Shown here: positions 11,301-63,611 of the stretch, piece after piece | Numbering within the stretch: position 1 is the first letter of the stretch | How the letters are laid out: every line of letters begins with the position of its first letter | Source: Marsupella aquatica | Taxonomy: Eukaryota > Plantae > Marchantiophyta | Reading direction: 5' to 3' | NCBI GenBank assembly: GCA_973895155.1 | Contig: OZ316898.1 | Location: forward strand, 7,117,079-7,181,078 | Length of the DNA: 64,000 nucleotides | Position numbers and translations under genes: made by a program | Notes under the pieces: model-generated | The model's input: the letters and a program-made list of their open reading frames with translations, nothing else | What the model was told of the DNA's origin: nothing | Database searches by the model: none

Positions 11301-12578
11301 ATGGTCGGAGTCATGGGATGCACAAGCGCTCTCGGCGTTTCAGTCTCTGCTGCGGTGATCTCCCCTGAGTCTCCATCACGATCTTCTTCGCAGGATGGAA
11401 TTTATGGTGGCCATGGCTTTCGACCGGCTGCCCCGAAGGCGACGACGATGAAGAGGAATTTTGAGCCATTACTGAAGGTAGTAGCGAAGAGCATCAGCAG
11501 CACGCCATGGAGAGAAACGTCATTTCGTGGGAGAATGAAAACTAAGGATGTCAGGGTGCAGGCATCTTCGTCGGATGAGAAGTCTGGTGAGAAGGGTCAG
11601 GTGAAGACGGAGAATGTGCCTGGCTGGGCAGAACCCAACTCCGAAGAGCTTCCTCCATGGGCTAAGACCGAGCGCCCAGTCTCCCAGGAGCCAGCGCAAG
11701 ATCTCCCATTCCCTGTCTACCTCATTGGCTCCACTCTGGTGGCTATCGCGGCGGTACATCTCTATTCGACGCTGCTGATTATTGCTCTTTTGCTCTTTCA
11801 GAGTCAACTTTCATGGCTCTGGTGCCTCTTGCTGAAATTTTCTCCTCTCCCTCTCCAGTCTGGTGCGAGTGTTTGACAGTGCCAGTTCTGGCCCTGGACA
11901 TCTTATGGGTATTTCCATGATTGAATGAATCAATCAAAGCCCACGGTGCTTAGTTTGTAACTACGGTTGGAGGGTGCGTAGTTGCAAACTTGTACAAATT
12001 TCTTTCGTACTTCCAAGCTACTTCTGCACGGGTTGCTGAATCTGGTGAAGTAGCACATTCTTTTGAGAACGAGATGGCAACTGATCGCGTTTCCGGTCAC
12101 AGAGTTTAGCCATCCTAGTGCAGTGTTCGGAATTCCTAAGTTCGAACTTTTGCCTTCCCTAGCGTTTTTGTTGGAAATATGCCCATAAGTTTGTGCTTTG
12201 ATTTGTGTAGGTGGGTTCGGTGTTTGAATACTTCAACAAGAATCCGATTTTCGGAGTGATATACCCGGACAGTCCGTTCTACACCCCTATTCTAGGCTTC
12301 TTCGCCATCACCGGCCTGCCAACGGCGGTAAGTCTCCTCTGGTAGCAATTTTCTCAGTAAGGCTTTTTTCGGAATATTTCTACGCGTCTCTCAGTAGATC
12401 ACTTTCAACAGCTCTACAGACAAGTCTTTCGTGTAAAAGCCACTTCCCGGCCTTATAGAGTCCCAAATCTGAGCATATTGCTCACGTTTTTCTGCAGGGT
12501 TTCTTGTTCTACAAATGCATACAATTAGCAAACAAGGCATCCGAGGAAGCAGACAAGGAGGATGGCTTTCGTCGGTGA
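11301..12578 (+). CDS. Plastid/thylakoid membrane protein of unknown function, At1g50020-like, 3 exons, ~216 aa
   Basis: Exons 11301-11753, 12211-12327, 12498-12578 (GT-AG). Transit-peptide-like N-terminus. Conserved PFPVYLIGSTLVAIAAVGSVFEYFNKNPIFG...PILGFFAITGLPT...ANKASEEADKEDGF. Confidence 0.85.
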
Positions 12579-42937: not shown

Positions 42938-45415
42938 TTAGAATCGCTCTCCAAATCTTACAGATAGTGACCCACTACCCTCGTTGCAATCCATGGCATA
43001 CTCAGCCCTGATAGTACCCAGCTTCACCCCAACACCGTAAGTAGCTCCATTGCCAGCTCGTCTGAAATATTCAGTTGGATTTCCCCTCACGTCCTTCGAG
43101 CTTCCAAGGTCGGTTCCATACTCCGCGAAGGCATAGGTGTGTGAATTCTTTATAGGGATCCGAACTTCGGTAGCAACCTCCAGGAACTTTCTGCAAGCAC
43201 CCAGTTCTCCAATACTGTAGCCTCGTACAGAATACGGGCCACCTAATGTGTATGCATCATAGGTTGCAAGATCTCCCACGCACCCACCATATCGACCATG
43301 AAGTACCAACACAGGAGGCGGTTTGGTTTGATCCTTTGTGTCTTCCGGTTGAAGCTGGACAAAGTGGGTAACGGTAAGTTGATGGCGGTTAAAGAATGGG
43401 AACTTGCTGCCGAGTCCTAATCCTTGATCCCACTGGAATATGTTTCGAGTTCCAATAGGCGTACCGTTCACAAATCGCGTGTTGTCATGGGTAATATTGC
43501 CTTGAAGGAAAGCAACACGGTCAATTCCCGTATCACTGTGTGTCGTTGGAGGACCTTCCATAGACAATGCCCCACTGGGCAGAGTCCTAGATCCGTTGGT
43601 GCAGATGGCACTTGTTTCATCTCTTGTAGTTACCTCTTCCACAACCAAACCGTAAGTGAACTTACTTTGTCGTGTGAAGTTTTCAGTCAAATTTGCTTTA
43701 AAACCAGCTCTATCCACCCAAATGGCCGGTACTTCGTCTTGGCCAGCTCCACCAGTGAACACAGCACTTAGCTTCCGACTATTGAAACAGCTTGCTCGAA
43801 ATGTGCGGCTCCGGGGGTCATCTACTCCATCGACATAAGGGTGGACGTACTCTGCCTTGAAGCCAAGATCATCTTGAGGGTTTAGTAGGTTACTGGAGGT
43901 GACGCAGCCTAGGATGGAGCGATTCAAGCCATAGAGGTTACGGTGCTCAAAAGTAACGCTTCCGCCGGGTCGAATTGAAGCCAGGGTCGGACGACCAGAA
44001 CTTCCAGGGAAGACACTCCACTCAGAACTGACTTCAGCTGTTTTCTGCTCGAGCTCCTTCAGCTTCACTTCAACAACAATACCACCATCACTCTCTTCAT
44101 CGGGCCTCGGGTTGACTTCAATGTTGGAGAATAAGGCCAGCCCATTCACATTCCTCAAGGCCTTTTTGCCTGCCTCAATATTAAATACTTGACCGGATGT
44201 GAGCTGTTCTGGTAACTCCCTGCCTATAATTGGCATCTTAGTGACACCCTCACAAGGCACACCCATCTTATCCAAAAATTGAATCTGCAATTTGGTAATG
44301 TCTCCCTCCACAACCTCGCAAACCACCTCATTAGTATTCAAATTCCCAAAATTCACAACTTGGGCACAGGCATATCCTTCCTCGTGGTACCACCTCTGAA
44401 CCCTGTCTCTAATTCTTTGAAGCATCCGGGCAGTGACCCTAGTTTCGGTGCGTAGCCAGCCGGAGATCTCCCGCTCGACACTCTTGGGCAGCATGCAGGG
44501 TCTAGCTCTCCTGAGGCGACTCTTATATTCATCTTCCTGAACCTTGGCCATTTCCTCTCGCTGCTGATCCGTCATCGTCGTTTCGGTCTCAGGCAGACGG
44601 CTCTGAGAGAGCAATCCAACATTTACACATCTGAATGAGTCTGCAGGTTGCCATTGGCTCTCCACAAACGAAATCTGCATTTTCAAGCTTCCGTCGGTTT
44701 GGGTCAACCCTTCCATCTCCACGGTTTGGAACATTCCACAATTCAGTAAGTTGTCCACCTCAGCATCAAGCTGTGCCTTCGTAGCAATCCCTCCAGGGCG
44801 CAACGTTACCAGCTCATAGAATGGGTCCTTTCCATTAACAGGCTGCTTGGTCCGCTTATCTATCAACTCTACACCTGTGATCTTATATTTCTTATTAGGA
44901 TTCAGCTTGCTTACGTGCACCTTAATGTCCACTTTCAAACCGTGGGGATCAAAACCTTCAGACTCGTCACCGGCAATGGCCAGACCTATATTGTCAAAAA
45001 TTGAGGACCACCCGCTTCCACCATGGCCACCTCCTCCACCTCCACCACCTCCGAAACCCCCACCGTCTCCTCCCAAGCTTCCTCCGCCAAAACCACCACC
45101 CAGGGCAGAGAGAATAGAAACAGCTCCAAGCCCCGAAGTCACTCCTGCCGCACAGGACAGAACTTTGTGCCAGTCTACAGACTTGGAGAGCAGAGAGATA
45201 GACGATATATTTGGGGACAATCGCCTACGCCCCCGGGCCCCTCTTGGCTCTGAAGAAGCTGAGGACGAGCTCCGCAAACAGAAGAATCTCGATGGACTAT
45301 GCAAGGACTGCATGGCCGAATATGTGTCTATCTGCGCTTCTCTACCAGAAAAATGCTGGAGCAATATGCTCCCACCATTTATCCCCGTCGAAGTTCCATA
45401 AGTGAGTCCTTCCAT
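42938..45415 (-). CDS. TOC75: Chloroplast outer-envelope import channel Toc75-III (Omp85/BamA family), intronless, ~825 aa
   Basis: First ATG at 45415. Bipartite transit peptide with a polyglycine stretch, POTRA region (GYACAQVVNFGNLNT), barrel motif SVRGY and C-terminal RFGERF. Confidence 0.96.
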   Translation of the reverse strand: MEGLTYGTSTGINGGSILLQHFSGREAQIDTYSAMQSLHSPSRFFCLRSSSSASSEPRGARGRRRLSPNISSISLLSKSVDWHKVLSCAAGVTSGLGAVSILSALGGGFGGGSLGGDGGGFGGGGGGGGGHGGSGWSSIFDNIGLAIAGDESEGFDPHGLKVDIKVHVSKLNPNKKYKITGVELIDKRTKQPVNGKDPFYELVTLRPGGIATKAQLDAEVDNLLNCGMFQTVEMEGLTQTDGSLKMQISFVESQWQPADSFRCVNVGLLSQSRLPETETTMTDQQREEMAKVQEDEYKSRLRRARPCMLPKSVEREISGWLRTETRVTARMLQRIRDRVQRWYHEEGYACAQVVNFGNLNTNEVVCEVVEGDITKLQIQFLDKMGVPCEGVTKMPIIGRELPEQLTSGQVFNIEAGKKALRNVNGLALFSNIEVNPRPDEESDGGIVVEVKLKELEQKTAEVSSEWSVFPGSSGRPTLASIRPGGSVTFEHRNLYGLNRSILGCVTSSNLLNPQDDLGFKAEYVHPYVDGVDDPRSRTFRASCFNSRKLSAVFTGGAGQDEVPAIWVDRAGFKANLTENFTRQSKFTYGLVVEEVTTRDETSAICTNGSRTLPSGALSMEGPPTTHSDTGIDRVAFLQGNITHDNTRFVNGTPIGTRNIFQWDQGLGLGSKFPFFNRHQLTVTHFVQLQPEDTKDQTKPPPVLVLHGRYGGCVGDLATYDAYTLGGPYSVRGYSIGELGACRKFLEVATEVRIPIKNSHTYAFAEYGTDLGSSKDVRGNPTEYFRRAGNGATYGVGVKLGTIRAEYAMDCNEGSGSLSVRFGERF

Positions 45416-45860
45416 GGTGAAACGGGGGCGAAACAATCTCAAACACAGACCTCACTGTCCTCCAAAAATCTCACTCCACACCTCGCTGCGACAAATCAGT
45501 CCGTCCCAAACAAAAAGCAACAGATTGACCGTCGAAACAGTCTAAACCCTAAATATGTGACGCTCCAGCAAATCATCAGAACGAGAGACTTATCTGCACT
45601 TCTCTACGAGAGAAATGAAGGAGCAATAATGAAGTGCTCCAGTCGTTCATCCCCGTCGAAGTTCCATATGTGCGTCCTTCCATGGCCGAATTGATCGGGG
45701 TGAGCAAAACCATACGCAGACCTCACTCCTGTACTGTGGTGCAAAGATCTGACTCCACACCGACCGAAGCTCAATGCGTCTGAAGCGACACATTGAGGTT
45801 CAAGAGAGCATAAACCCTAAATATGGGACGACCCAGCATATCATGAAGAAGGAGAGATAG
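45330..45860. repeat. Tandem duplication (~265 bp) of the TOC75 5' UTR and first codons
   Basis: 45592-45860 aligns to 45330-45590. Both copies contain CCCCGTCGAAGTTCCATA, CAGACCTCACT and the telobox AAACCCTAAATATG. Confidence 0.85.
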
Positions 45861-51859: not shown

Positions 51860-52057
51860 AGTTGAAAGTCGACACGACTGCTGTCCTTCCCATTATCAGG
51901 CGATCCAGTCAGAGCTTCTTGCAGTCAGTAAATCTGCTCCGACCCAGTATTCAAGGCACTCGTGGCCTCGTCCAGCAGCTAGTGAAATTGCGGGATTCCT
52001 CAGCACAGCCCGAGCGATGGCCACTCGTGGCTTTTGTCCGCCTGAGAGCTGGACTCG
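51860..52057 (-). pseudogene. ABCB (P-glycoprotein-type) NBD fragment
   Basis: VQLSGGQKPRVAIARAVLRNPAI, then after a frameshift LLDEATSALN.GSEQ...QEAL. This covers the ABC signature, Walker B and D-loop. Confidence 0.85.
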
Positions 52058-52500
52058 TTTTCCTTTTTGGTTACGTGATTGGATTGGATTCATGAACAAC
52101 ACAGCGGATGCTCTATGAATACCCTTCCCTCACGACACGATCGAAAATAAAGGGGCTGAAGGGGCATAAGCGCTACTACTACGTCTTCTTCGTGGCCACA
52201 GAACCTGCTTCCGGGAGGCAAGGGAGTCCAAGGAAGGGCGTCCAAGGAAGGGCTGCCTGTTTGGCTGGAAGGGCTCATCAAGCAAGGGCGTCCAAGGAAG
52301 GGCTGCCTGTTTGGCTGGAGGCTGGCTCGGAGAAGAGCATGAGGCTTTACTTGAAGCTGGGGTGGGAAGTGGTGGAGGAGTTGGTGTTGGGGAAGGGAAA
52401 GGCGACAGCGGATGGGACATTGATGCAGGGTGGGGAGGGTGTGAAGCTTTGGCCCATGGTGTGGTGGCCACCAACGACTAAAGAGTGAAAGCTAGTGTTA
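52051..52500 (+). pseudogene. Truncated, scrambled copy of GNAT exon 2 and its intron end
   Basis: Aligns to 57648-58071 and lacks exon 1. The acetyl-CoA motif region is replaced by duplicated CCAAGGAAGGGCTGCCTGTTTGGCTGGA pieces. Confidence 0.9.
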
Positions 52501-55500
52501 ACAGCCTTACATACGTACTATAAGATTTCGTTGTGACGAGAATGCGGCCCAATGCAAGGGCATTGAGATATATCCTCTCTACTCATGCGTGGATCGAAAG
52601 AAGAAAAATTATAATTGTAAACAATGGAGAAACCTCATGTTCTACAGTTTCTATCCTCGAATACTAGAGTCCGTACGGCTCAAGCTTCATTAATTTAGAT
52701 CTAATCGAGAAGATTAAGCTTAGCTTCTGAACCTTATTCCCAACCACCTGCATACAGCAAGAGAGTCTTCCTCCTTCCTACACCTCACTCTCGAGTCTTG
52801 CAGAAGAGGAGTCGATCTCCTAGGTAGGTACCCCAATGTACTGTTTTCTTGTACTCGACTCTCGTCCTCGACCATTAGCAGGGATCAAACTTAGCCGCAA
52901 GAAAGCTGCCCACTGTAAAAGAACGAATATAGATGCTGTCAAATCTACAATTGCACTAGATAGGTCACGGATGTTAACTCACGACAGTAGGACGAACTAA
53001 TTAATTAACCAGCTCTATTCAATTTGGTTATAATGTAACACGGCCTACATTTATTTCACAATTACAAGTTCATGCTTTTCTCAACAAAGACTAGTCTCGC
53101 GGACATGAGTGTCCGTCTCCACTCATCTACTTCTCAATCTCTATAATTTCGTTGCTCTGCTACCATTGATGGTACTTTTCATTACGACTCTCCTTCCTCT
53201 CCAACAGTCCGGCATCTGGACGTAACTCCTCTATGGAGATCAATATCTTCATGAATGTCATCGAGAATGTCGTGCTCAGTCTCCAAAGACTGCGTTCTGC
53301 GCGCAGTTCAGGTGAACAACATAGCTTGAAACTTCTTCCACGTGTATGACTATCGTAAACTCTTGTCCTTCCTCTAAAATCAATGTTTTGACTTTCAAAT
53401 GACCAAGTCTTCAATAAACAAGCTACAATGAAAGGAATGAATGCATCAACCGATGAACGGGAATTTACCAAAAGGCCACACCACCAGGCCGCAAGAGAAA
53501 AAAGCGCAAGGAACACTTCAAAATCCGTCTACACAGAAAAACTCTTGGCCTTCTTTCACCCAGTCCAGGAAATACAGTAAGTTTGCTAGAAAGTTGGAGG
53601 CAGAGGACGGATTATATTGCTTGCAAATCCCTTTTCCATTCACAGGACAGACAACGTGTGCTTGTCAGGAGCACGAACACAAGTAGGACCATGCATTTCA
53701 AGGGCAACGAAGTTTGACCAAAGCTTGGGTGCATAAACGTTGAATGTCCATTCTACGAAAGAAATTGCTCATTCAGCGGTTACACCAAGCAATCGATTAG
53801 GATCAGAGATACACCTGACTAGCATTAGCAGACGACCTGTTTATCCAGGAACAATGCACCCGCAATGCAATGCAATGCACTAACACTAAATGTGATAGTA
53901 TCAACCAAAGCTTGAGCTGCTGCAAAAGGAACGAAAAACTCGAGCTGTTGCAAAAGGTTGCAAAACTAAGGAACAAATCCTGGTGTTCATTCCTACCTAT
54001 ATGAGATCAAATCTGGTTTAAGGAGATCCCCTCTCACTGACCAAACTTGAAACTTGTTGACATCCTTTTTCTAAACTCTTTTTGGAAAATAAATAATACA
54101 ACTCTCAAGAACACTTAGTTCTTGGAATCCACGGGTTGCATTGTACAACATTGATTTTGGACAATTGTACTCTTTGATTCTTTCTGGATAAGATTGGGTT
54201 AATACTCTGCAATTTCAATAATATATCATTTCACCTTTCGTTCTTGCATAGAATGAAAGTAATGTAGGACTCACAACTCTATTTCCCAACGCGCTCTGCT
54301 TCTGGCCTAATGCCCACAACATTTCTTGGAGTAAAAAAATCTGGACCAGGCCAGGCATCTAACGTGATGGACTTTGAAATTCTTTGGAACCCACCTTCAT
54401 GAACCCAGGTCATGAACTCACGAGTTCTCATTTCCGGGCTCATTTCTAAGTCTTAGTCCTTGCCTGAAACCTGTTTTCCCTTGATTGCATCACAAGAGAC
54501 TCATCCAAAGGGCAATAGTAATTGTTTGTTGCTTTACCGGGCTTTACCAGGTACTGGTGGGAGTGTTCCTAGCTAGAGCATCTCCAACCATTATTGAGTT
54601 GGTCTATTGTAACCTTATAGTTAAATTGACCAAACCCAATATGGTTGAAGCCAAAACAACAACACAATGGGTTTATTGGAACTCTATAACTCAATTCTGA
54701 GCTTCCTGGGTTTTCTGTTACAGGATCTGTATAGGAGCTGTATATGAGCTGCTGTATAGTGCATTGATTGAATACAGGATTGATACTTGTGTTCTTGAAG
54801 ATCTAAATAATGATGAGTATTCAACAGTGCCTATGTGAGGAGGCACTAAATAACCTGGTAACCATTGGGCTTGCATTTTGACATATCATTCTTTACTATA
54901 TAAGTATACCAGGCGCAGTCAATTGGAAGTTTTGGGGGCTGCCTGGTGTTACCATGGCTGTTGAGTGGGTGCTCACATATGGGTAAATGGTGCATTGTTG
55001 GCAGTTTTCTGGCAGCAGCTGGGCAGACTGGATTGGCAGCCTTCGGTGGGTGGATTTGGCTGTTGCCCTGATAGTTACTAGGCTGGTTTTCTGGTTAGAG
55101 AGTTTGCTTCTTTTGGATGGCTTTGCACCTTTTGTGTTTTTTTTTGGGGGGGAAGGTCTTTTTTGGTTTTTAACTTTTTGGAACTCCACATAAAGGGAAC
55201 AGTAAGTCACAACATTTGATCCCAATATCTATGTCACTACTGAAGTGAATTATCAAATAGTCATGACTCTCTGGGGCAATGCTCCTTTTGTGTTGTCTTT
55301 GCTCTTTCATTAGCTTTGTTCAGTTGGCAGTTTTCCACCTTCTGGGGTTCCTCCCTCCCTCGCTGATCTGCCCCCTTCCCATTAGTCTGTAGGGTTGGGC
55401 CCTTCTCCTTGTACTCTTTGGGAGTGCTCCTTCTTCTTGCCCCTTAGTTTCATTGCTTTTGTTTTCTCCTGACTCCTCCCCTCAAAAGGGAGTCATTGTT

Positions 55501-55775: not shown

Positions 55776-57108
55776 TCGTTTTAATTGTATAGAGTAAGTA
55801 AGGAAATTCCATATGCAGTTGGAGATCTCTTTTAGTTGGGCACTTTGACGCGATGCCTCCGTTGACCCGGCTGTTGCGCATGTGCGACTTAACAGTGCTT
55901 TCTCTCTCTGCAAGTAATTGGAATGGGCTACCTCAGGTCTCGGTCTGCCTAGCCCTTCCATCAAATCGAGCCTCCTACAGGCTTGTGCAAGGCTGCAAGG
56001 ATGACATTGCCTTGCCCAGATTGCTTGAAGCCGGACCTTTTGCCTCTCTTTGCTGAAATTCTGCTTCCCCACATCGATTATTGGGACCCAGGTTCTTCTG
56101 ACTCCGACTCGCAAGCTGGACCATTCTGCTGCCCCCAATCGATCCTAGCTAGCTCCCCAGCTAGCTACGGCACTGCCAATTCTCATTGCTTGGTTCTCGA
56201 GTTCGATCTGCAAGGGCTGGACCGTGCTGCCTTCATCGATCGACTGCTCCAGTATTTAGATTACTGCTTTCCTGTAAAAAGGTTTGGTACTCCCTTTGCT
56301 CTCACTGGCAACATTGACCTTCCCCCGCAGACCCGTGTTTCAAGCGCTTCGGCTGTGCTTCCCTTTTGCTAGTTTGCCTGCGTCCATTGCCATCTTGATT
56401 TTCCACGTACCGCTGCTCAAGATGACCTGAACGAGAATGAAGTGAACGGAATGATCTGATTTCATTCGCCCGGTTGGATACTATTACTGTTGGATTTTGA
56501 TTCGAGGTAACTTCGAGTTCAAATGCAATTCCGGGAGACATTCTGCGATTAGGGATTCTCAAACAAGTGTAATTGGTTTTATTGTTAATAATAGATCCAG
56601 CAATGAGTGGATAGAAAATTCAGGAGTCACACTTATGCCACTTAAATGCGTGACATTTTCTAGTAAGACATTCAAGAATCAAGAGATCTGCTAATCTAAT
56701 TGAGGACGCGGTTGCCTCCTTGCAGGGCATCAATTCTCCTTACGTGTTGGCCAATCTTGATAACAGCGTAGCCGCCGTGATCAGCAGCCTCCGTAGTAGT
56801 TCGTTCGTCCATGCTTGGCACCAGCAAAATTGGCAATTATCTCACTTCTGGCGACAAAAAGGGGCTCATTGCTTCTGTCACTACAGACTGCCGTTACTGT
56901 AGTCGTCTCGATCATCAAGCCACATTGCTGAAGCAGGTACATCTTGAGCCCTGATAGCTCAAATCGAAAGCAGGTACACTCCAAAACGTGAGACAGGTAG
57001 ATCTTCTAATCTCATTCCGCAACAAGCAATCAAGCTGCCATCGCAGCCAACGTCCAGGTCGCCGTCGGAATTCCAACTCAGCACTCACCTCACACTCGGG
57101 CTTTCCAA

Positions 57109-58059
57109 ATGTCATCCCACCAAATATCAACAGGCGGCCATGACAACAGCCGTCGCCTTGTCCCCAACGCCTCCTTGCTACTCTCCTGCGCCTTCGCCTC
57201 TGACCCCGTGATAAACTACTTGATATCCTCGATGCCGGCCGCGAAGCGAGCCGCCTATCTTCCTGAATATTTCACAGCTTTGTTGACGGCAGCGACGATG
57301 AATCATGGAAGTATTGAGAGCATTGCGGATCCGATTGGAAATGCGCCGGAGGAGGAGGACGGTCAGGGTGGGAAAGCGGTGCACGAAGAATGTGGGGAAT
57401 GGAAGTGCTGCGGGGTGCTGATGCCGCCTGGAGAGGCTATCGATAATCCGTGGACGCTTTTGCCGGCAGGGCTGCTGAAGATGGCGCGAAGTGTGAGATG
57501 GGGAGGTTGTGTGGTATGTGTTTTCAGGACCTTTCCTTTCTGTTCAGCTTTCTCGATTGTCTGAGAAAGCAAATTTTCTAACAGATCGATCTTGGTTACA
57601 ACTATAACTCTGATTGCTACATTTTCGTCGTTGATCATGTGATTGGATTGGACTCGTTTTCCTTTTGGTTACGTGATTGGATTGGATTCATGGACAACAC
57701 AGCGCATGCTGCATGAATACCCTTCCCTCATGACACAAGCGAAAAAGAAGGGTCTGAAGGGGCAGAAGCGCTACTACTACGTCTTCGTCGTGGGCACAAA
57801 ACCTGCCGCCGAGAGGCAAGGGCTATGTTCAGCCATCATGAGGGAGTATCAAGCAAGGGCGGCCAAGGAAGGGCTGCCGGTTTGGCTGGAGGCTACGACG
57901 GAGAAGAGCATGAGGCTTTACTTGAAGCTGGGGTGGGAAGTGGTGGAGGAATTGGTATTGGGGAAGGGAAAGGCGACAGCGGATGGGACATTGACGCAGG
58001 GTGGGGAGGGTATAAAGGTTTGGCCCATGGTGTGGTGGCCATCAGCGACTAAAGAGTGA
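57109..58059 (+). CDS. GNAT-family N-acetyltransferase of fungal (ascomycete) type, 2 exons, ~253 aa
   Basis: Exons 57109-57513 and 57703-58059 (GTATGT...CACAG). Motifs AFASDPVINYL, LMPPGEAIDNPWTLLPAG, RYYYVFVVGT...RQGLCS (motif A), PVWLEATTEKSMRLYLKLGW (motif B) and GEGIKVWPMVWWP. Confidence 0.88.
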
Positions 58060-58959
58060 AAGCTAATGTTGACCAACTAATATCCCTGGAAGAGTATGCC
58101 CATCACACAGTACTCTACTAGTCTCTTCATTAAGAAAGTAAAATCTGAACTTACATAATTTGGGTTTGTCTTCAAATCAATTGTGAAGAAAATCAATTGT
58201 GAAGAAAAGACAAACAGAATAAAAAATTATATGAACTTTGAGTTTGTGCTCAAGTGTGAAGAGAACACAAACAGAATCAAAAAGAGTATGAGTGAAAACA
58301 CTTCACGGATTAAAATGTATGCACTCCTCTTGTTACCAGGGCATAGTGGGTAATACTAGCCTCTCAAAGCTTTGGCTCAAGCCCTCATTTTCTGGGCTTT
58401 ATAGCCCACAAGGCCCTCGAAACAGGGCGTTACTATATACTAATGACCTGCGACTAAACTTGCAATGTCACATCTGAGAGGAAATATCTAGTTTTGGTCA
58501 CATTTGCAATGGATGATGCAAGTATAGCAAAACCTGTAAAGTTTCCTGAGAGCGAGCGAAAATCTCCACAGGAGATGCTATGAGTATCGACATGCGAGTT
58601 GCGTCTGGGCTCCTGCGCTTCGCATACCGGCGGACGAACTGGACTGAATGCAAGTTTATCTGGGAGAGCCCTCGAGAATTGGATTGTGCTCGAGAATGGA
58701 GGTCCTGATGGCCCGGACGCTGGCGACGACACCGCTTTCACAGGCAATAGCGAGCTCATCAGCACCATCCCCAGCACTATTTCACGGGGCCTGGAATTAT
58801 GCACATCGAATTTCTGGGGTCGAGGTTAGGATTAGGGTTTAGCAGCATCAGTAGCAGGAGCAGGGCACGGCGGAGAAGGAGCTGCAGGGATTTATCATCC
58901 GAGAGTTCGAGCAGCAGGAAGCGAGTTTCTCTTCACCTCTAGAGCTCATCAGCAACGGC

Positions 58960-62210: not shown

Positions 62211-62772
62211 AAATTCCCAGTGTCATTCCCCAATCGAGGTTTTGGGTTTACTGATCTATGCACCTCCAGCGATCGAATGCAAGTGCTGTTTCGTGCGGAT
62301 CCTGGTGAATCGTTGTGGAACTTCCACTGAATCTGTGTTTGGTTTGAGCTTGCTGTTCTGCCTTCAGCTCTCTGGGAGCTCCGAATTACGTATTCGTGGT
62401 TTTGGGTTTACTGATCTATGCTCCTGAGTCTTCCAGCGATCGAAAGAAATGGATAGACTCGAAGAATAAGCTAATGCGGCATGTTGATCGAAATGTGATC
62501 GAAGCATTCGGCCTGAATACTTTAGATCCTTGTGTTTCAGGGTTTTGTGGTGTATGAAGAGTTCGGAGATCGAAGCCAAGTGATTCCAAAATGCAAATCA
62601 ATGCTGCACGGTGTTGATAGAAATGCGAACGAAGCAATTGGGTTAAGTAATTTCGATACCTGTGACATCCGGAGCTTTGTCCTCTCTCTCGCTCGGCCTC
62701 GTTCGCAACATACGGATCGGGGTGGAGCGTCTAGGGTTTTAGGTCCGGGTGATTGGATCGGAGTTCAGCAAA

Positions 62773-63611
62773 ATGCGTGCTCATCTTTTGCCGTTGATTG
62801 CACGAGCCGCTATAGAAGCTGGGAGAGATTCGTCATCGTCAACTACAAAAGCCCTGGTGACTGGAATTTCTGAAGTACCTGGAGTTTCTGGAATCGTTGG
62901 AGTATGTAGAGGTTTGAGAGTTGGGAGAGCTTTAGGGATCGATTCTAGTGCCGGACAGTTTGCGTGGAGAAGAGAATTCGCTTCCGTAGCTGCGATCGAT
63001 CAGGAAGATGATAGACCGCCGAGTATGCGCAAGTCAGCGGCGAAGAAAGAGGACTTGGTGCTGCGAGCATTTCTCCGGGAGAACAGTGGCAAAATCCCCG
63101 CAAAGAAGGAGAGGAGATTAGGGTTGGTACCGAGTATCGTTTTCGAGCAGGAGAAAATATCGGAGAAAAGGCTCATTTCATTGGAGCGGAAGCAGCTGGA
63201 TGACATTGTAAATAGACTCGGGCGAACTTTTTTCCTGTCAAGGGCGTACGAGTTGGAAGTCTATGACAAGCCTGGGCCTGACGGACAGCTTCTCTCCAGA
63301 GAGATGGTCTTACCACGCACGGTGTGTTGTAGCCTCTTCTGGAAACTCTCCTTGTAATTTTGTACTATATGTGTAGCTCTTATCTAGGAGGTGGTGCATG
63401 TCCACATTTGTGTAGATTGGAACAGTGAGGTCCTAGCATATCAGCATTTTCAATCATACGAGACAATTGTCTGTGAGTGTGCAGATTCACCATTCTGCGG
63501 AAGACAAGCTTCTGAATGTCACTTTCATGAAGGCACTTTCAGACTCACAAGTGAAGGTGGAAGTTCCAATCATGTTTCTGGGAGAAGATTCCTGCCCTGG
63601 AATTCGTAGAG
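62773..63611 (+). CDS. RPL25: Organellar (probably mitochondrial) 50S ribosomal protein bL25/TL5/CTC, 5' exons; gene continues beyond the window
   Basis: Exons 62773-63321 and 63485-63611. RENSGKIPAKKERRLGLVPSIVFEQ, FFLSR, VLPR, LLNVTF and VKVEVPIMFLGEDSCPGIRRG match the plant L25 family. Confidence 0.88.

What the first reader, a model, noticed from the sequence alone, without database searches (positions are those of the whole stretch)
57109..58059. Intact fungal-type GNAT acetyltransferase in a plant genome: candidate fungus-to-plant gene transfer
Seen: an intact two-exon GNAT embedded among clearly plant genes (RBD1, ClpP3 relic, bL25), with a second decayed copy 5 kb away, which argues against simple contamination. 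Recalled knowledge: the block pattern AF..DP...YL / PPG..DNPWT.LP.G / KRYYY.F..GT / LPVWLEATTE.S..LY.KLG / LGKGK..ADG....GGEG.K.W.MVWWP is typical of uncharacterised filamentous-ascomycete GNATs, and I do not recognise it from angiosperms. The intron has a GTATGT donor and an internal CTAACAG about 70 nt in, like a short fungal intron that was later extended. Inference: a horizontally acquired small-molecule acetyltransferase, possibly for detoxification or specialised metabolism.
Basis: partly seen in the sequence, partly recalled or inferred. Interest (0 to 1): 0.85.

Follow-up and report, generated by a model that had tools for sequence, protein, structure and literature searches.

The report
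Fungal acetyltransferase gene in a liverwort
An intact two-exon acetyltransferase gene in this leafy-liverwort chromosome was acquired, intron included, from an ascomycete fungus before this species and Calypogeia diverged; it is a solid but fairly ordinary example of the fungus-to-bryophyte gene transfer already known to be common.

Summary
Window 57109-58059 (+) carries an intact two-exon gene: 135 + 118 codons and a 189-nt phase-0 GT-AG intron. Exon 2 is a GNAT acetyl-CoA-binding domain. A truncated copy (3' part of the intron plus exon 2) lies at 52050-52502.

- All named full-length homologues come from five classes of Pezizomycotina. The only named plant hit is the leafy liverwort Calypogeia fissa.
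- Separate exon trees place the liverwort sequences as one clade. That clade is sister to unnamed ascomycetes whose copy sits in a conserved fungal neighbourhood (acyl-CoA dehydrogenase – GNAT – dynamitin – LSD1-like).
- The intron sits at the identical codon boundary in liverworts, Mollisia, Scytalidium and these metagenome fungi. The window's intron still aligns with the nearest fungal intron.

The gene is genuinely integrated.
- A Toc75 gene and a bL25 gene flank it.
- DNA contigs from two organisms and two studies span it.
- Its 5' flank and intron are collinear with the Calypogeia locus.

dN/dS against Calypogeia is 0.29. The predicted fold of a fungal orthologue is closest to puromycin N-acetyltransferase. 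The substrate and expression are untested.

The same genome has several other unchecked scan notes of fungal-type genes. This is a new member of a known kind.

The parts
57109..57513 (+). Exon 1 (135 codons). It encodes the N-terminal substrate-side half of the GNAT and carries the family motifs AF..DP, MPPG and DNPWT.
   Evidence: The ORF and the GTATGT donor were read. It is homologous to fungal N-terminal halves and to Calypogeia P0002.
57319..57387 (+). Liverwort-specific acidic insertion of about 23 codons within exon 1 (codons 71-93). It is absent from all fungal homologues.
   Evidence: The exon-1 alignment shows it shared by the window, Calypogeia and the P0001 contig. It is missing in L002, L005, Mollisia and Phialocephala.
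57514..57702 (+). Phase-0 spliceosomal intron (189 nt, GTATGT...ACAG), inherited with the gene.
   Evidence: The same codon boundary (…GGC-V | R-M-L…) is found in Calypogeia, Mollisia, Scytalidium, L002 and L005. The sequence aligns with the Calypogeia intron (z 19) and with the L002 fungal intron (z 7.4, 0 of 200 shuffles).
57703..58059 (+). Exon 2 (118 codons plus TGA). It encodes the GNAT acetyl-CoA-binding core and the C-terminal GGEG..W.MVWWP tail.
   Evidence: It matches Pfam PF00583. It is 77-79% identical to the fungal metagenome ORFs P0005 and P0006. The profile matches puromycin N-acetyltransferase 7k09.
56194..56897 (.). 5' flank, collinear with the Calypogeia fissa locus. This is the orthologous insertion site and possibly holds the promoter or 5' UTR.
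   Evidence: Three collinear blastn blocks match L001 8056-9557; the best is 68% over 201 nt, E 3.5e-18. There is no similarity to the fungal loci.
52050..52502 (+). Truncated paralogous fragment: the 3' part of the intron plus exon 2, with no exon 1. An internal duplication disrupts motif A. It is a young local duplicate.
   Evidence: blastn and tblastn are and the translation. dS is 0.18 and dN/dS 0.64 against the gene. It is sister to exon 2 in the tree (99/87). It is also present in the read contigs of both organisms.

Best explanation
This is a nuclear gene of a leafy liverwort. It was acquired as genomic DNA, with its single spliceosomal intron, from a filamentous ascomycete.

The donor was probably a Leotiomycete-like lineage in which the gene sits between an acyl-CoA dehydrogenase gene and the dynamitin gene. 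The transfer predates the split between this species and Calypogeia.

Since then the gene has gained a roughly 23-residue acidic loop, and its intron has lengthened (189 nt here, about 1.4 kb in Calypogeia). It has evolved under purifying selection.

The product is a roughly 250-aa single-domain GNAT acyl-CoA N-acyltransferase with no targeting extension. Its fold is closest to puromycin N-acetyltransferase. By inference, it transfers acetyl from acetyl-CoA to an amine on a small molecule, such as a microbial toxin or a specialised metabolite.

Shown here: the gene structure, its fungal affinity, its integration in the chromosome, its orthology with Calypogeia, and sequence constraint. Inferred only: catalytic activity, the class of substrate, expression, and the exact donor.
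For: Gene model and domain:
-.

Fungal distribution:
- Every named full-length homologue is from Pezizomycotina: Leotiomycetes, Dothideomycetes, Eurotiomycetes, Sordariomycetes and Lecanoromycetes.
- The only named plant hit is Calypogeia fissa.
- An exhaustive HMMER search with exon 1 finds only 142 cluster representatives.
- No bacterial or archaeal genome carries the signature peptides.

Trees:
- Exon 1, careful tree: liverworts form one clade (100/95). L002 joins next (100/85), then P0043 (97/85), then L005 with P0003 (85/92).
- Exon 2, careful tree: liverworts plus P0005 and P0006 form one clade (100/99). It is sister to a clade that contains a Scytalidium sp. 3C cluster.

Polarity of the transfer:
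- The nearest fungal copies (L002, the P0005 contig, L005 and the P0043 contig) all lie next to dynamitin.
- The two longer contigs of these four, L005 and the P0043 contig, also carry acyl-CoA dehydrogenase and an LSD1-like gene.
- The nearest Atlas clusters to that dynamitin are Ascomycota.

Intron:
- The phase-0 position is identical in liverworts and fungi.
- The window's intron aligns with the L002 intron.

Integration:
- Toc75 and bL25 flank the gene.
- Contigs from 4 runs, 2 organisms and 2 studies cover the gene and both flanks.
- The 5' flank and the intron are collinear with the Calypogeia chromosome.

Constraint:
- dN/dS is 0.29 at dS 0.59 against Calypogeia.
- 21 of 23 near-invariant family residues are kept.

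Fold:
- The family profile hits 7k09 at E 2.8e-12.
- The AlphaFold model of the Mollisia orthologue has pLDDT 94. Its best Foldseek hit is 7k09, with target TM 0.80.
Against: - No RNA evidence was available, so neither expression nor splicing is shown.
- The trees rest on only about 110-118 columns each and are unrooted. Nesting within fungi depends on midpoint rooting plus the synteny argument.
- The AU test does not reject placing the liverworts just outside the dynamitin-linked fungi (p 0.08).
- The closest fungi are unnamed metagenome contigs, so the donor taxon is an inference.
- The Calypogeia copy in the public assembly has a 2-bp deletion that gives a frameshift and a stop.
- A 94%-identical second copy of exon 1 in organism B shows about 10 nonsynonymous to 3 synonymous differences. 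The gene therefore seems dispensable in some lineages.
- Motif A reads E-R-Q-G-L-C in the window, instead of the canonical Q/R-x-x-G-x-G/A.
- Absence from other plants rests on searches limited by length and word matching, and on names that only NCBI records carry.
Confidence: 0.8

Rival explanations
1. The transfer is real, but the gene is now a functionless, slowly decaying passenger in this genome. It would be an intact-looking ORF with no expression or selected role.
For: - No RNA holder was found.
- The Calypogeia orthologue carries a frameshift.
- A truncated duplicate lies nearby.
- The divergent exon-1 copy in organism B has mostly nonsynonymous differences.
- Motif A deviates from the canonical pattern, and one near-invariant Gly is replaced by Arg.
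Against: - The ORF, both splice sites, the start and the stop are intact after a divergence of dS about 0.59 from Calypogeia.
- dN/dS is 0.29 overall and 0.21 in exon 2.
- 21 of 23 near-invariant residues are kept. The two changes are shared by all the liverwort sequences, so they are old and tolerated.
Confidence: 0.13
2. The gene is an ancient eukaryotic gene inherited vertically by both fungi and plants, and lost in nearly all plant lineages.
For: - The shared intron position could in principle be ancestral.
- An unrooted tree with a monophyletic liverwort clade cannot formally exclude a root on the liverwort branch.
Against: - Only Pezizomycotina and leafy liverworts appear among the named hits.
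- The liverwort sequences are 67-77% identical to one fungal lineage, while fungal members differ from one another by up to 60-70%.
- The intron sequence is still alignable between the liverwort and the L002 fungus, which is implausible after more than 1 Gyr.
- A root on the liverwort branch would make closely related, syntenic fungi successive outgroups to five fungal classes.
Confidence: 0.03
3. The segment is fungal DNA from a contaminant or symbiont that was misassembled into a plant scaffold.
For: - GC content at 57001-58000 is the highest in the window (0.53).
- Leafy liverworts commonly host ascomycetes (my own background knowledge).
Against: - Contigs from four runs, two organisms and two studies join the gene to both flanks. 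They include a 3,069-nt contig with no mismatches.
- The 5' flank and intron are collinear with the Calypogeia chromosome-scale scaffold.
- The insertion in exon 1 is specific to liverworts.
- A local partial duplicate exists in the same genome.
- Plastid-related genes lie on both sides.
Confidence: 0.01
4. The transfer went the other way, from a liverwort into the L002/P0005 fungal lineage.
For: - L002, P0005 and P0006 are the closest sequences to the liverworts.
- The L002 intron is unusually long for a fungus (153 nt) and aligns with the plant intron.
Against: - L002, the P0005 contig, L005 and the P0043 contig carry the gene at the same fungal locus next to dynamitin. L005 and P0043 branch outside the L002-plus-liverwort group. 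The locus is therefore ancestral in the fungi.
- The family spans five fungal classes.
- The liverwort-specific insertion is absent from L002.
Confidence: 0.03

Closest known systems
Uncharacterised Pezizomycotina 'Acyl-CoA N-acyltransferase' / 'N-acetyltransferase domain-containing' proteins of about 225-250 aa (for example Mollisia scopiformis P0192, Phialocephala subalpina P0189, Lachnellula suecica P0051, the Scytalidium sp. 3C cluster of P0017, and Penicillium and Xylaria members)
   Same: - The same length and architecture.
- The same signature motifs (AF..DP, MPPG..DNPWT, YYY.F..GT, P.WLEATTE.S..LY, GKG...DG....GGEG...W.MVWWP).
- 21 of 23 near-invariant residues.
- The same phase-0 intron position.
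- The liverwort clade nests among them in both exon trees.
   Different: - It sits in a plant chromosome next to plant genes.
- It carries a liverwort-specific acidic insertion of about 23 residues.
- It has two clade-specific substitutions at otherwise near-invariant positions (Gly to Arg, Phe to Trp).
- Its intron is longer (189 nt to 1.4 kb, against 49-153 nt in fungi).
Puromycin N-acetyltransferase (PAC, Streptomyces alboniger; PDB 7k09/7k0a)
   Same: - It is the best solved relative of the family by sequence profile (E 2.8e-12 over the acetyl-CoA core).
- It is also the best by fold: the model of the Mollisia orthologue has target TM 0.80.
- Both are single-domain GNATs of about 200 aa with a helical N-terminal substrate-side half.
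   Different: - Identity is only about 17%.
- The match was obtained on a fungal proxy, not on the joined liverwort protein.
- There is no evidence that puromycin or any aminonucleoside is the substrate.
- PAC is bacterial and has no intron.
Published fungus-to-bryophyte horizontally transferred gene families (Nat Genet 2025, PMC12513842: 1,809 HGT-derived families in 49 streptophytes, including the fungal-derived FB lectin, RDS1 and EUPF in liverworts)
   Same: - The donor kingdom and the recipient group are the same.
- The gene is short and intron-poor.
- It is lineage-restricted ('accessory').
- It sits between genuine plant genes.
   Different: - This GNAT family is not named in that paper's main text, and its supplements were not readable here.
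- Here the donor's intron came along and still aligns with a living fungal lineage.
- The donor's genomic neighbourhood can be identified.

Membership tests
GNAT superfamily (Pfam clan Acetyltrans; PF00583) | Sequence match to the acetyl-CoA-binding core above the curated threshold | tested here: met
   Exon 2 scores 25.9 bits against a cut-off of 20.7, E 1.3e-5. Weaker hits fall on PF13527, PF13508, PF12746 and PF08445.
GNAT superfamily (Pfam clan Acetyltrans; PF00583) | Motif A pyrophosphate-binding loop Q/R-x-x-G-x-G/A | tested here: inconclusive
   The window reads E-R-Q-G-L-C and Calypogeia reads R-G-Q-G-L-C. Many fungal members read Q/R-G-x-G-L-C/G. The central Gly is invariant and is kept. 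The first and last positions deviate.
GNAT superfamily (Pfam clan Acetyltrans; PF00583) | Acetyl-CoA-dependent acyl transfer | not testable with these tools
   This needs an enzyme assay.
Pezizomycotina PAC-like GNAT subfamily (uncharacterised) | Signature motifs and near-invariant residues across both halves | tested here: met
   21 of 23 near-invariant columns are kept, and all the motif blocks are present.
Pezizomycotina PAC-like GNAT subfamily (uncharacterised) | Phase-0 intron between the ...G-G-C-x and R-M-L... codons | tested here: met
   The boundary is identical in the window, Calypogeia, Mollisia L003, Scytalidium L006, L002 and L005. It is absent in the L004 clade.
Pezizomycotina PAC-like GNAT subfamily (uncharacterised) | Phylogenetic placement inside the family | tested here: met
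   Careful exon-1 and exon-2 trees. Nesting relies on the midpoint root and on synteny.
Puromycin N-acetyltransferase-like fold | Whole-chain structural similarity to 7k09 | tested here: inconclusive
It was tested on the Mollisia orthologue only (pLDDT 94; Foldseek E 6.6e-13, TM 0.67/0.80).
Fungus-to-plant horizontal gene transfer | The recipient sequence nests within the donor-group diversity | tested here: met
   The AU test for the finest placement gives p 0.08.
Fungus-to-plant horizontal gene transfer | Absence from other plant lineages | tested here: inconclusive
   No named plant other than Calypogeia appears. However, only NCBI records carry names, and the searches are limited by length and word matching.
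Fungus-to-plant horizontal gene transfer | Physical integration in the host chromosome, shared by related hosts | tested here: met
   Toc75 and bL25 flank the gene. Independent DNA contigs span the borders. The locus in Calypogeia is orthologous.
Fungus-to-plant horizontal gene transfer | Expression and function in the recipient | not tested
   No RNA run was available. The only indirect support is dN/dS 0.29.

The most novel reading that the evidence does not exclude
The gene and its spliceosomal intron entered the common ancestor of a group of leafy liverworts (Jungermanniales) as genomic DNA. The donor would be a Leotiomycete of the kind that colonises liverwort rhizoids. The donor lineage survives and is identifiable by its acyl-CoA dehydrogenase – GNAT – dynamitin microsynteny. 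Its intron is still alignable with the plant's intron. The plant would have kept the enzyme to acetylate, and so neutralise or modify, an amine metabolite exchanged in that association.
Probability: 0.3. Interest if true: 0.6.

Novelty: new member of a known kind. Interest (0 to 1): 0.42.

Why it matters
Fungus-to-bryophyte transfer is already documented as frequent, so the existence of one more case is not surprising. What makes this locus useful is how cleanly it can be read.
- The donor's intron came along and sits at the identical codon boundary.
- The intron still aligns with that of a living fungal lineage.
- The donor-side genomic neighbourhood is recognisable.
- The recipient locus is orthologous in two liverwort genera.

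Together these give both polarity and a minimum age for the transfer. They also show directly that a fungal spliceosomal intron can persist, and grow, in a plant gene.

If the enzyme is expressed, it is a candidate for amine-toxin detoxification or specialised metabolism in leafy liverworts. It also offers an entry point to an entirely uncharacterised fungal GNAT family related to puromycin N-acetyltransferase.

Tried and rejected
- The joined 253-aa spliced protein was never searched, aligned as one row, or folded.
- The search for related loci with the 45-row alignment A3 failed because it had no conserved stretch. It worked with the exon-2 alignment A4 and found no bacterial or archaeal relative.
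- No RNA run holds the locus. All four runs laid on it are DNA contigs without splice joints, so splicing and expression remain untested.
- DNA could not be fetched for the P0005, P0001 and P0043 contigs because the files were too large. Only their gene tables were usable.
- In-window synteny with Calypogeia beyond the gene was looked for with tblastx and not found. Only the 5' flank, the intron and the exons are collinear. The TVP23/ECHIDNA neighbour seen in Calypogeia is reported for this genome only by an unchecked scan note outside my window.
- Dynamitin is not present in the window, in Calypogeia L001, or near the Mollisia or Scytalidium copies. No larger fungal fragment was therefore co-transferred, and the dynamitin synteny is specific to the closest fungal lineage.
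- The flanks show no similarity to the fungal loci.
- Pfam on ORFs around 59.5-60.3 kb did not confirm the ClpP relic.
- NCBIfam gave only sub-threshold generic GNAT hits.
- Literature searches found no paper naming this family or the run SRR18067441. The supplements of PMC12513842 are not held.

Full report
**What is there**

Window 57109-58059 (+) holds a complete two-exon gene.
- Exon 1 is 57109-57513, 135 codons from an ATG.
- A GTATGT donor follows at 57514. The intron is 189 nt and ends ACAG at 57702.
- Exon 2 is 57703-58059, 118 codons plus TGA.
- The intron is phase 0. If it were retained, translation would stop at 57562-57564.

Exon 2 passes Pfam's threshold for Acetyltransf_1/GNAT (25.9 bits against 20.7). 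Exon 1 has no Pfam family.

The joined 253-aa protein was never searched, folded, or used as one row.

**The second copy**

A second copy lies at 52050-52502. It corresponds to 57649-58073, that is, the last third of the intron plus exon 2, at 84% nucleotide identity.
- It has no exon 1.
- An internal duplication breaks the acetyl-CoA loop.
- dS against the gene is 0.18 and dN/dS is 0.64.
- In the exon-2 tree it is sister to the gene (99/87).

It is therefore a young local partial duplicate. Contigs from both organisms that carry the gene also carry this fragment.

**Who else has the gene**

- With exon 1, the word-index search found four proteins. The best named one comes from the leafy liverwort Calypogeia fissa (66% identity).
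- An exhaustive HMMER pass over 1.84 billion cluster representatives found only 142 hits. After the Calypogeia protein at 68%, identity drops to 55% or less.
- With exon 2, there are 37 hits, mostly metagenome ORFs of 115-130 aa at 55-79% identity. These are exon-sized ORFs of eukaryotic genes split at the same intron.
- A profile of full-length members retrieved 129 proteins. Every one that carries an organism name is from Pezizomycotina:
  - Leotiomycetes: Mollisia, Phialocephala, Cadophora, Acephala, Pseudogymnoascus
  - Dothideomycetes: Pseudocercospora, Fulvia, Hortaea, Cladosporium, Oleoguttula
  - Eurotiomycetes: many Penicillium
  - Sordariomycetes: Xylaria, Rosellinia, Fusarium, Purpureocillium
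  - Lecanoromycetes: Toensbergia, Mycoblastus
- add Scytalidium sp. 3C and Lachnellula suecica, both Leotiomycetes.
- No bacterial or archaeal species genome carries the signature peptides.
- The ESM Atlas's nearest clusters for exon 2 are also Ascomycota.

**The closest relatives are fungal, and the gene is resident in them**

P0005 and P0006 are the nearest sequences to exon 2, at 77-79% identity. Locus L002 carries P0006 and also the nearest non-liverwort exon 1, at 67% over aligned columns.

- In L002, in the P0005 contig, in L005 (P0008) and in the P0043 contig, the GNAT lies tail-to-tail with a dynamitin gene.
- The two longer contigs, L005 and the P0043 contig, show a wider conserved order: a GST gene, acyl-CoA dehydrogenase, GNAT, dynamitin, then an LSD1-like amine oxidase. 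Their ORFs are long and uninterrupted, as in fungi.
- The L002 and L005 dynamitins are 71% identical.
- The nearest Atlas clusters for that dynamitin are Ascomycota.
- From my own knowledge, land plants lack dynactin.
- Neither the window nor the Calypogeia locus contains dynamitin.

**Trees**

I built one tree per exon, using IQ-TREE with LG+C20 and both support values.

Exon 1 (56 rows, 110 columns):
- The window, the P0001 contig and Calypogeia form one clade (100/95).
- L002 joins next (100/85), then P0043 (97/85), then L005 with P0003 (85/92).
- This group sits within a larger group that holds Helotiales.

Exon 2 (61 rows, 118 columns):
- The liverwort sequences plus P0005 and P0006 form one clade (100/99).
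- Within it the liverworts group together (95/49).
- The clade is sister (88/87) to 17 metagenome rows. These include P0017, whose 90% cluster contains Scytalidium sp. 3C.

The larger quick trees agree.

The liverwort clade thus sits among fungi that share one genomic neighbourhood. That gives the polarity fungus to plant.

Caveats:
- The alignments are short and the trees are unrooted.
- The AU test does not significantly reject moving the liverworts just outside the four dynamitin-linked fungi (ΔlnL 13, p 0.08).

**The intron**

The phase-0 boundary lies between the codon after ...G-G-C and R-M-L... It is identical in all of these:

| Source | Intron length |
|---|---|
| Window | 189 nt |
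| Calypogeia | about 1.4 kb |
| Mollisia scopiformis | 125 nt |
| Scytalidium sp. 3C | 49 nt |
| L002 | 153 nt |
| L005 | 130 nt |

- One fungal clade (L004) lacks the intron.
- The window's intron aligns strongly with the 5' part of the Calypogeia intron (z 19).
- More remarkably, it also aligns with the L002 fungal intron over more than 100 nt (z 7.4, 0 of 200 shuffles). Other intron pairs score at chance.
The nearest fungal intron is already about 150 nt. The 'short intron later extended' idea is therefore not supported. The intron arrived at roughly its present size and expanded further only in Calypogeia.

**Integration and age**

- The window carries an 834-aa Toc75 ORF at 42941-45442 (minus strand) and a bL25 gene at 62749-63354. 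Both are plastid- or organelle-related plant genes, one on each side.
- Logan contigs of four DNA runs (two organisms, two studies; a fifth run from a third study holds part of the stretch) cover the gene and both borders. They include a mismatch-free 3,069-nt contig. There is no break at the gene's edges.
- In the chromosome-scale Calypogeia fissa scaffold the gene has the same structure.
- About 0.7 kb of the window's 5' flank (56194-56897) is collinear with the Calypogeia 5' flank, so the loci are orthologous.
- The three liverwort sequences share an acidic insertion of about 23 residues in exon 1 that no fungus has.
- The transfer therefore predates the divergence of these liverworts (dS 0.59).
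- There is no similarity between the plant flanks and the fungal loci, and no second fungal gene is nearby. Only the roughly 1-kb gene was retained.

**Is it functional?**

In favour:
- dN/dS against Calypogeia is 0.37 for exon 1 and 0.21 for exon 2, and 0.29 from the summed counts.
- 21 of 23 near-invariant family residues are kept. The two exceptions are shared by all the liverwort sequences.

Against:
- No RNA data could be found.
- The public Calypogeia copy has a 2-bp deletion early in exon 2 that creates a TAA. The annotators split it into two proteins.
- A 94%-identical second version of exon 1 in organism B differs mostly at nonsynonymous sites.
- The first position of motif A is Glu in the window.

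**What it probably does**

- The family profile's best solved relatives are puromycin N-acetyltransferase (7k09, E 2.8e-12) and a Corynebacterium GNAT (2qec).
- An AlphaFold model of the Mollisia orthologue (pLDDT 94, pTM 0.89) matches 7k09 best (Foldseek E 6.6e-13, target TM 0.80). After that come insect arylalkylamine and polyamine N-acetyltransferases.

The family therefore looks like a single-domain N-acetyltransferase acting on small-molecule amines. The liverwort N-terminus aligns with the fungal start and has no extension, so a cytosolic location is the default inference. The substrate is unknown, and no member of the family appears to have been characterised.

**Comparison with what is known, and novelty**

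Fungus-to-bryophyte transfer is well documented and frequent. PMC12513842 reports 1,809 HGT-derived families in 49 streptophytes, with more per species in bryophytes. Other first-stage notes on this same genome list at least eight further fungal-looking genes, all unchecked.

This is therefore a new member of a known kind. Its distinguishing points are the co-transferred and still-alignable intron, the identifiable donor-side synteny, and an orthologous locus in two liverwort genera.

I found no earlier scan finding of this gene on other DNA.

Noticed in passing
window 42941-45442 (-): An uninterrupted 834-aa ORF encodes a complete Toc75 (two POTRA families plus Omp85). A Toc75 gene without introns is unusual for a land plant. 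It could be a retrocopy or a lineage feature.
   Followed up: partly
L001 (Calypogeia fissa CBCUJL010000003.1) about 11846-11850: The Calypogeia orthologue has a 2-bp deletion early in exon 2, which gives a frameshift and a TAA. The public annotation splits it into P0002 (144 aa) and P0033 (78 aa). This is either a recent pseudogenisation or an assembly error.
   Followed up: partly
L001 13798-13940: Calypogeia also has a small decayed, frameshifted fragment of exon 2 about 1.7 kb downstream of its gene. It appears independent of the window's upstream partial copy.
   Followed up: no
window 57085-57357 (run X4, record 27): Organism B carries a second version of exon 1 that is 94% identical. 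About 10 nonsynonymous and 3 synonymous differences are listed, which suggests a relaxed homeologue or paralogue.
   Followed up: partly
L005 4642-12738; the P0043 contig; L002 361-2297: Several unnamed ascomycete metagenome contigs share a conserved microsynteny: acyl-CoA dehydrogenase, GNAT, dynamitin, then an LSD1-like amine oxidase. It is absent around the Mollisia and Scytalidium copies.
   Followed up: partly
P0183 (Mycoblastus sanguinarius), P0072, P0004: These database proteins read through the in-frame intron at the conserved position, which inserts about 16-21 spurious residues. This is an annotation artefact that inflates apparent insertions in the family.
   Followed up: no
L004 8016-8669: One clade of the family (the P0200-P0213 group, near Cladosporium) has no intron at the conserved site, so the intron was lost or gained within Pezizomycotina.
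   Followed up: no
The ORFs I tried around 59.5-60.3 kb gave no ClpP Pfam hit.
   Followed up: partly
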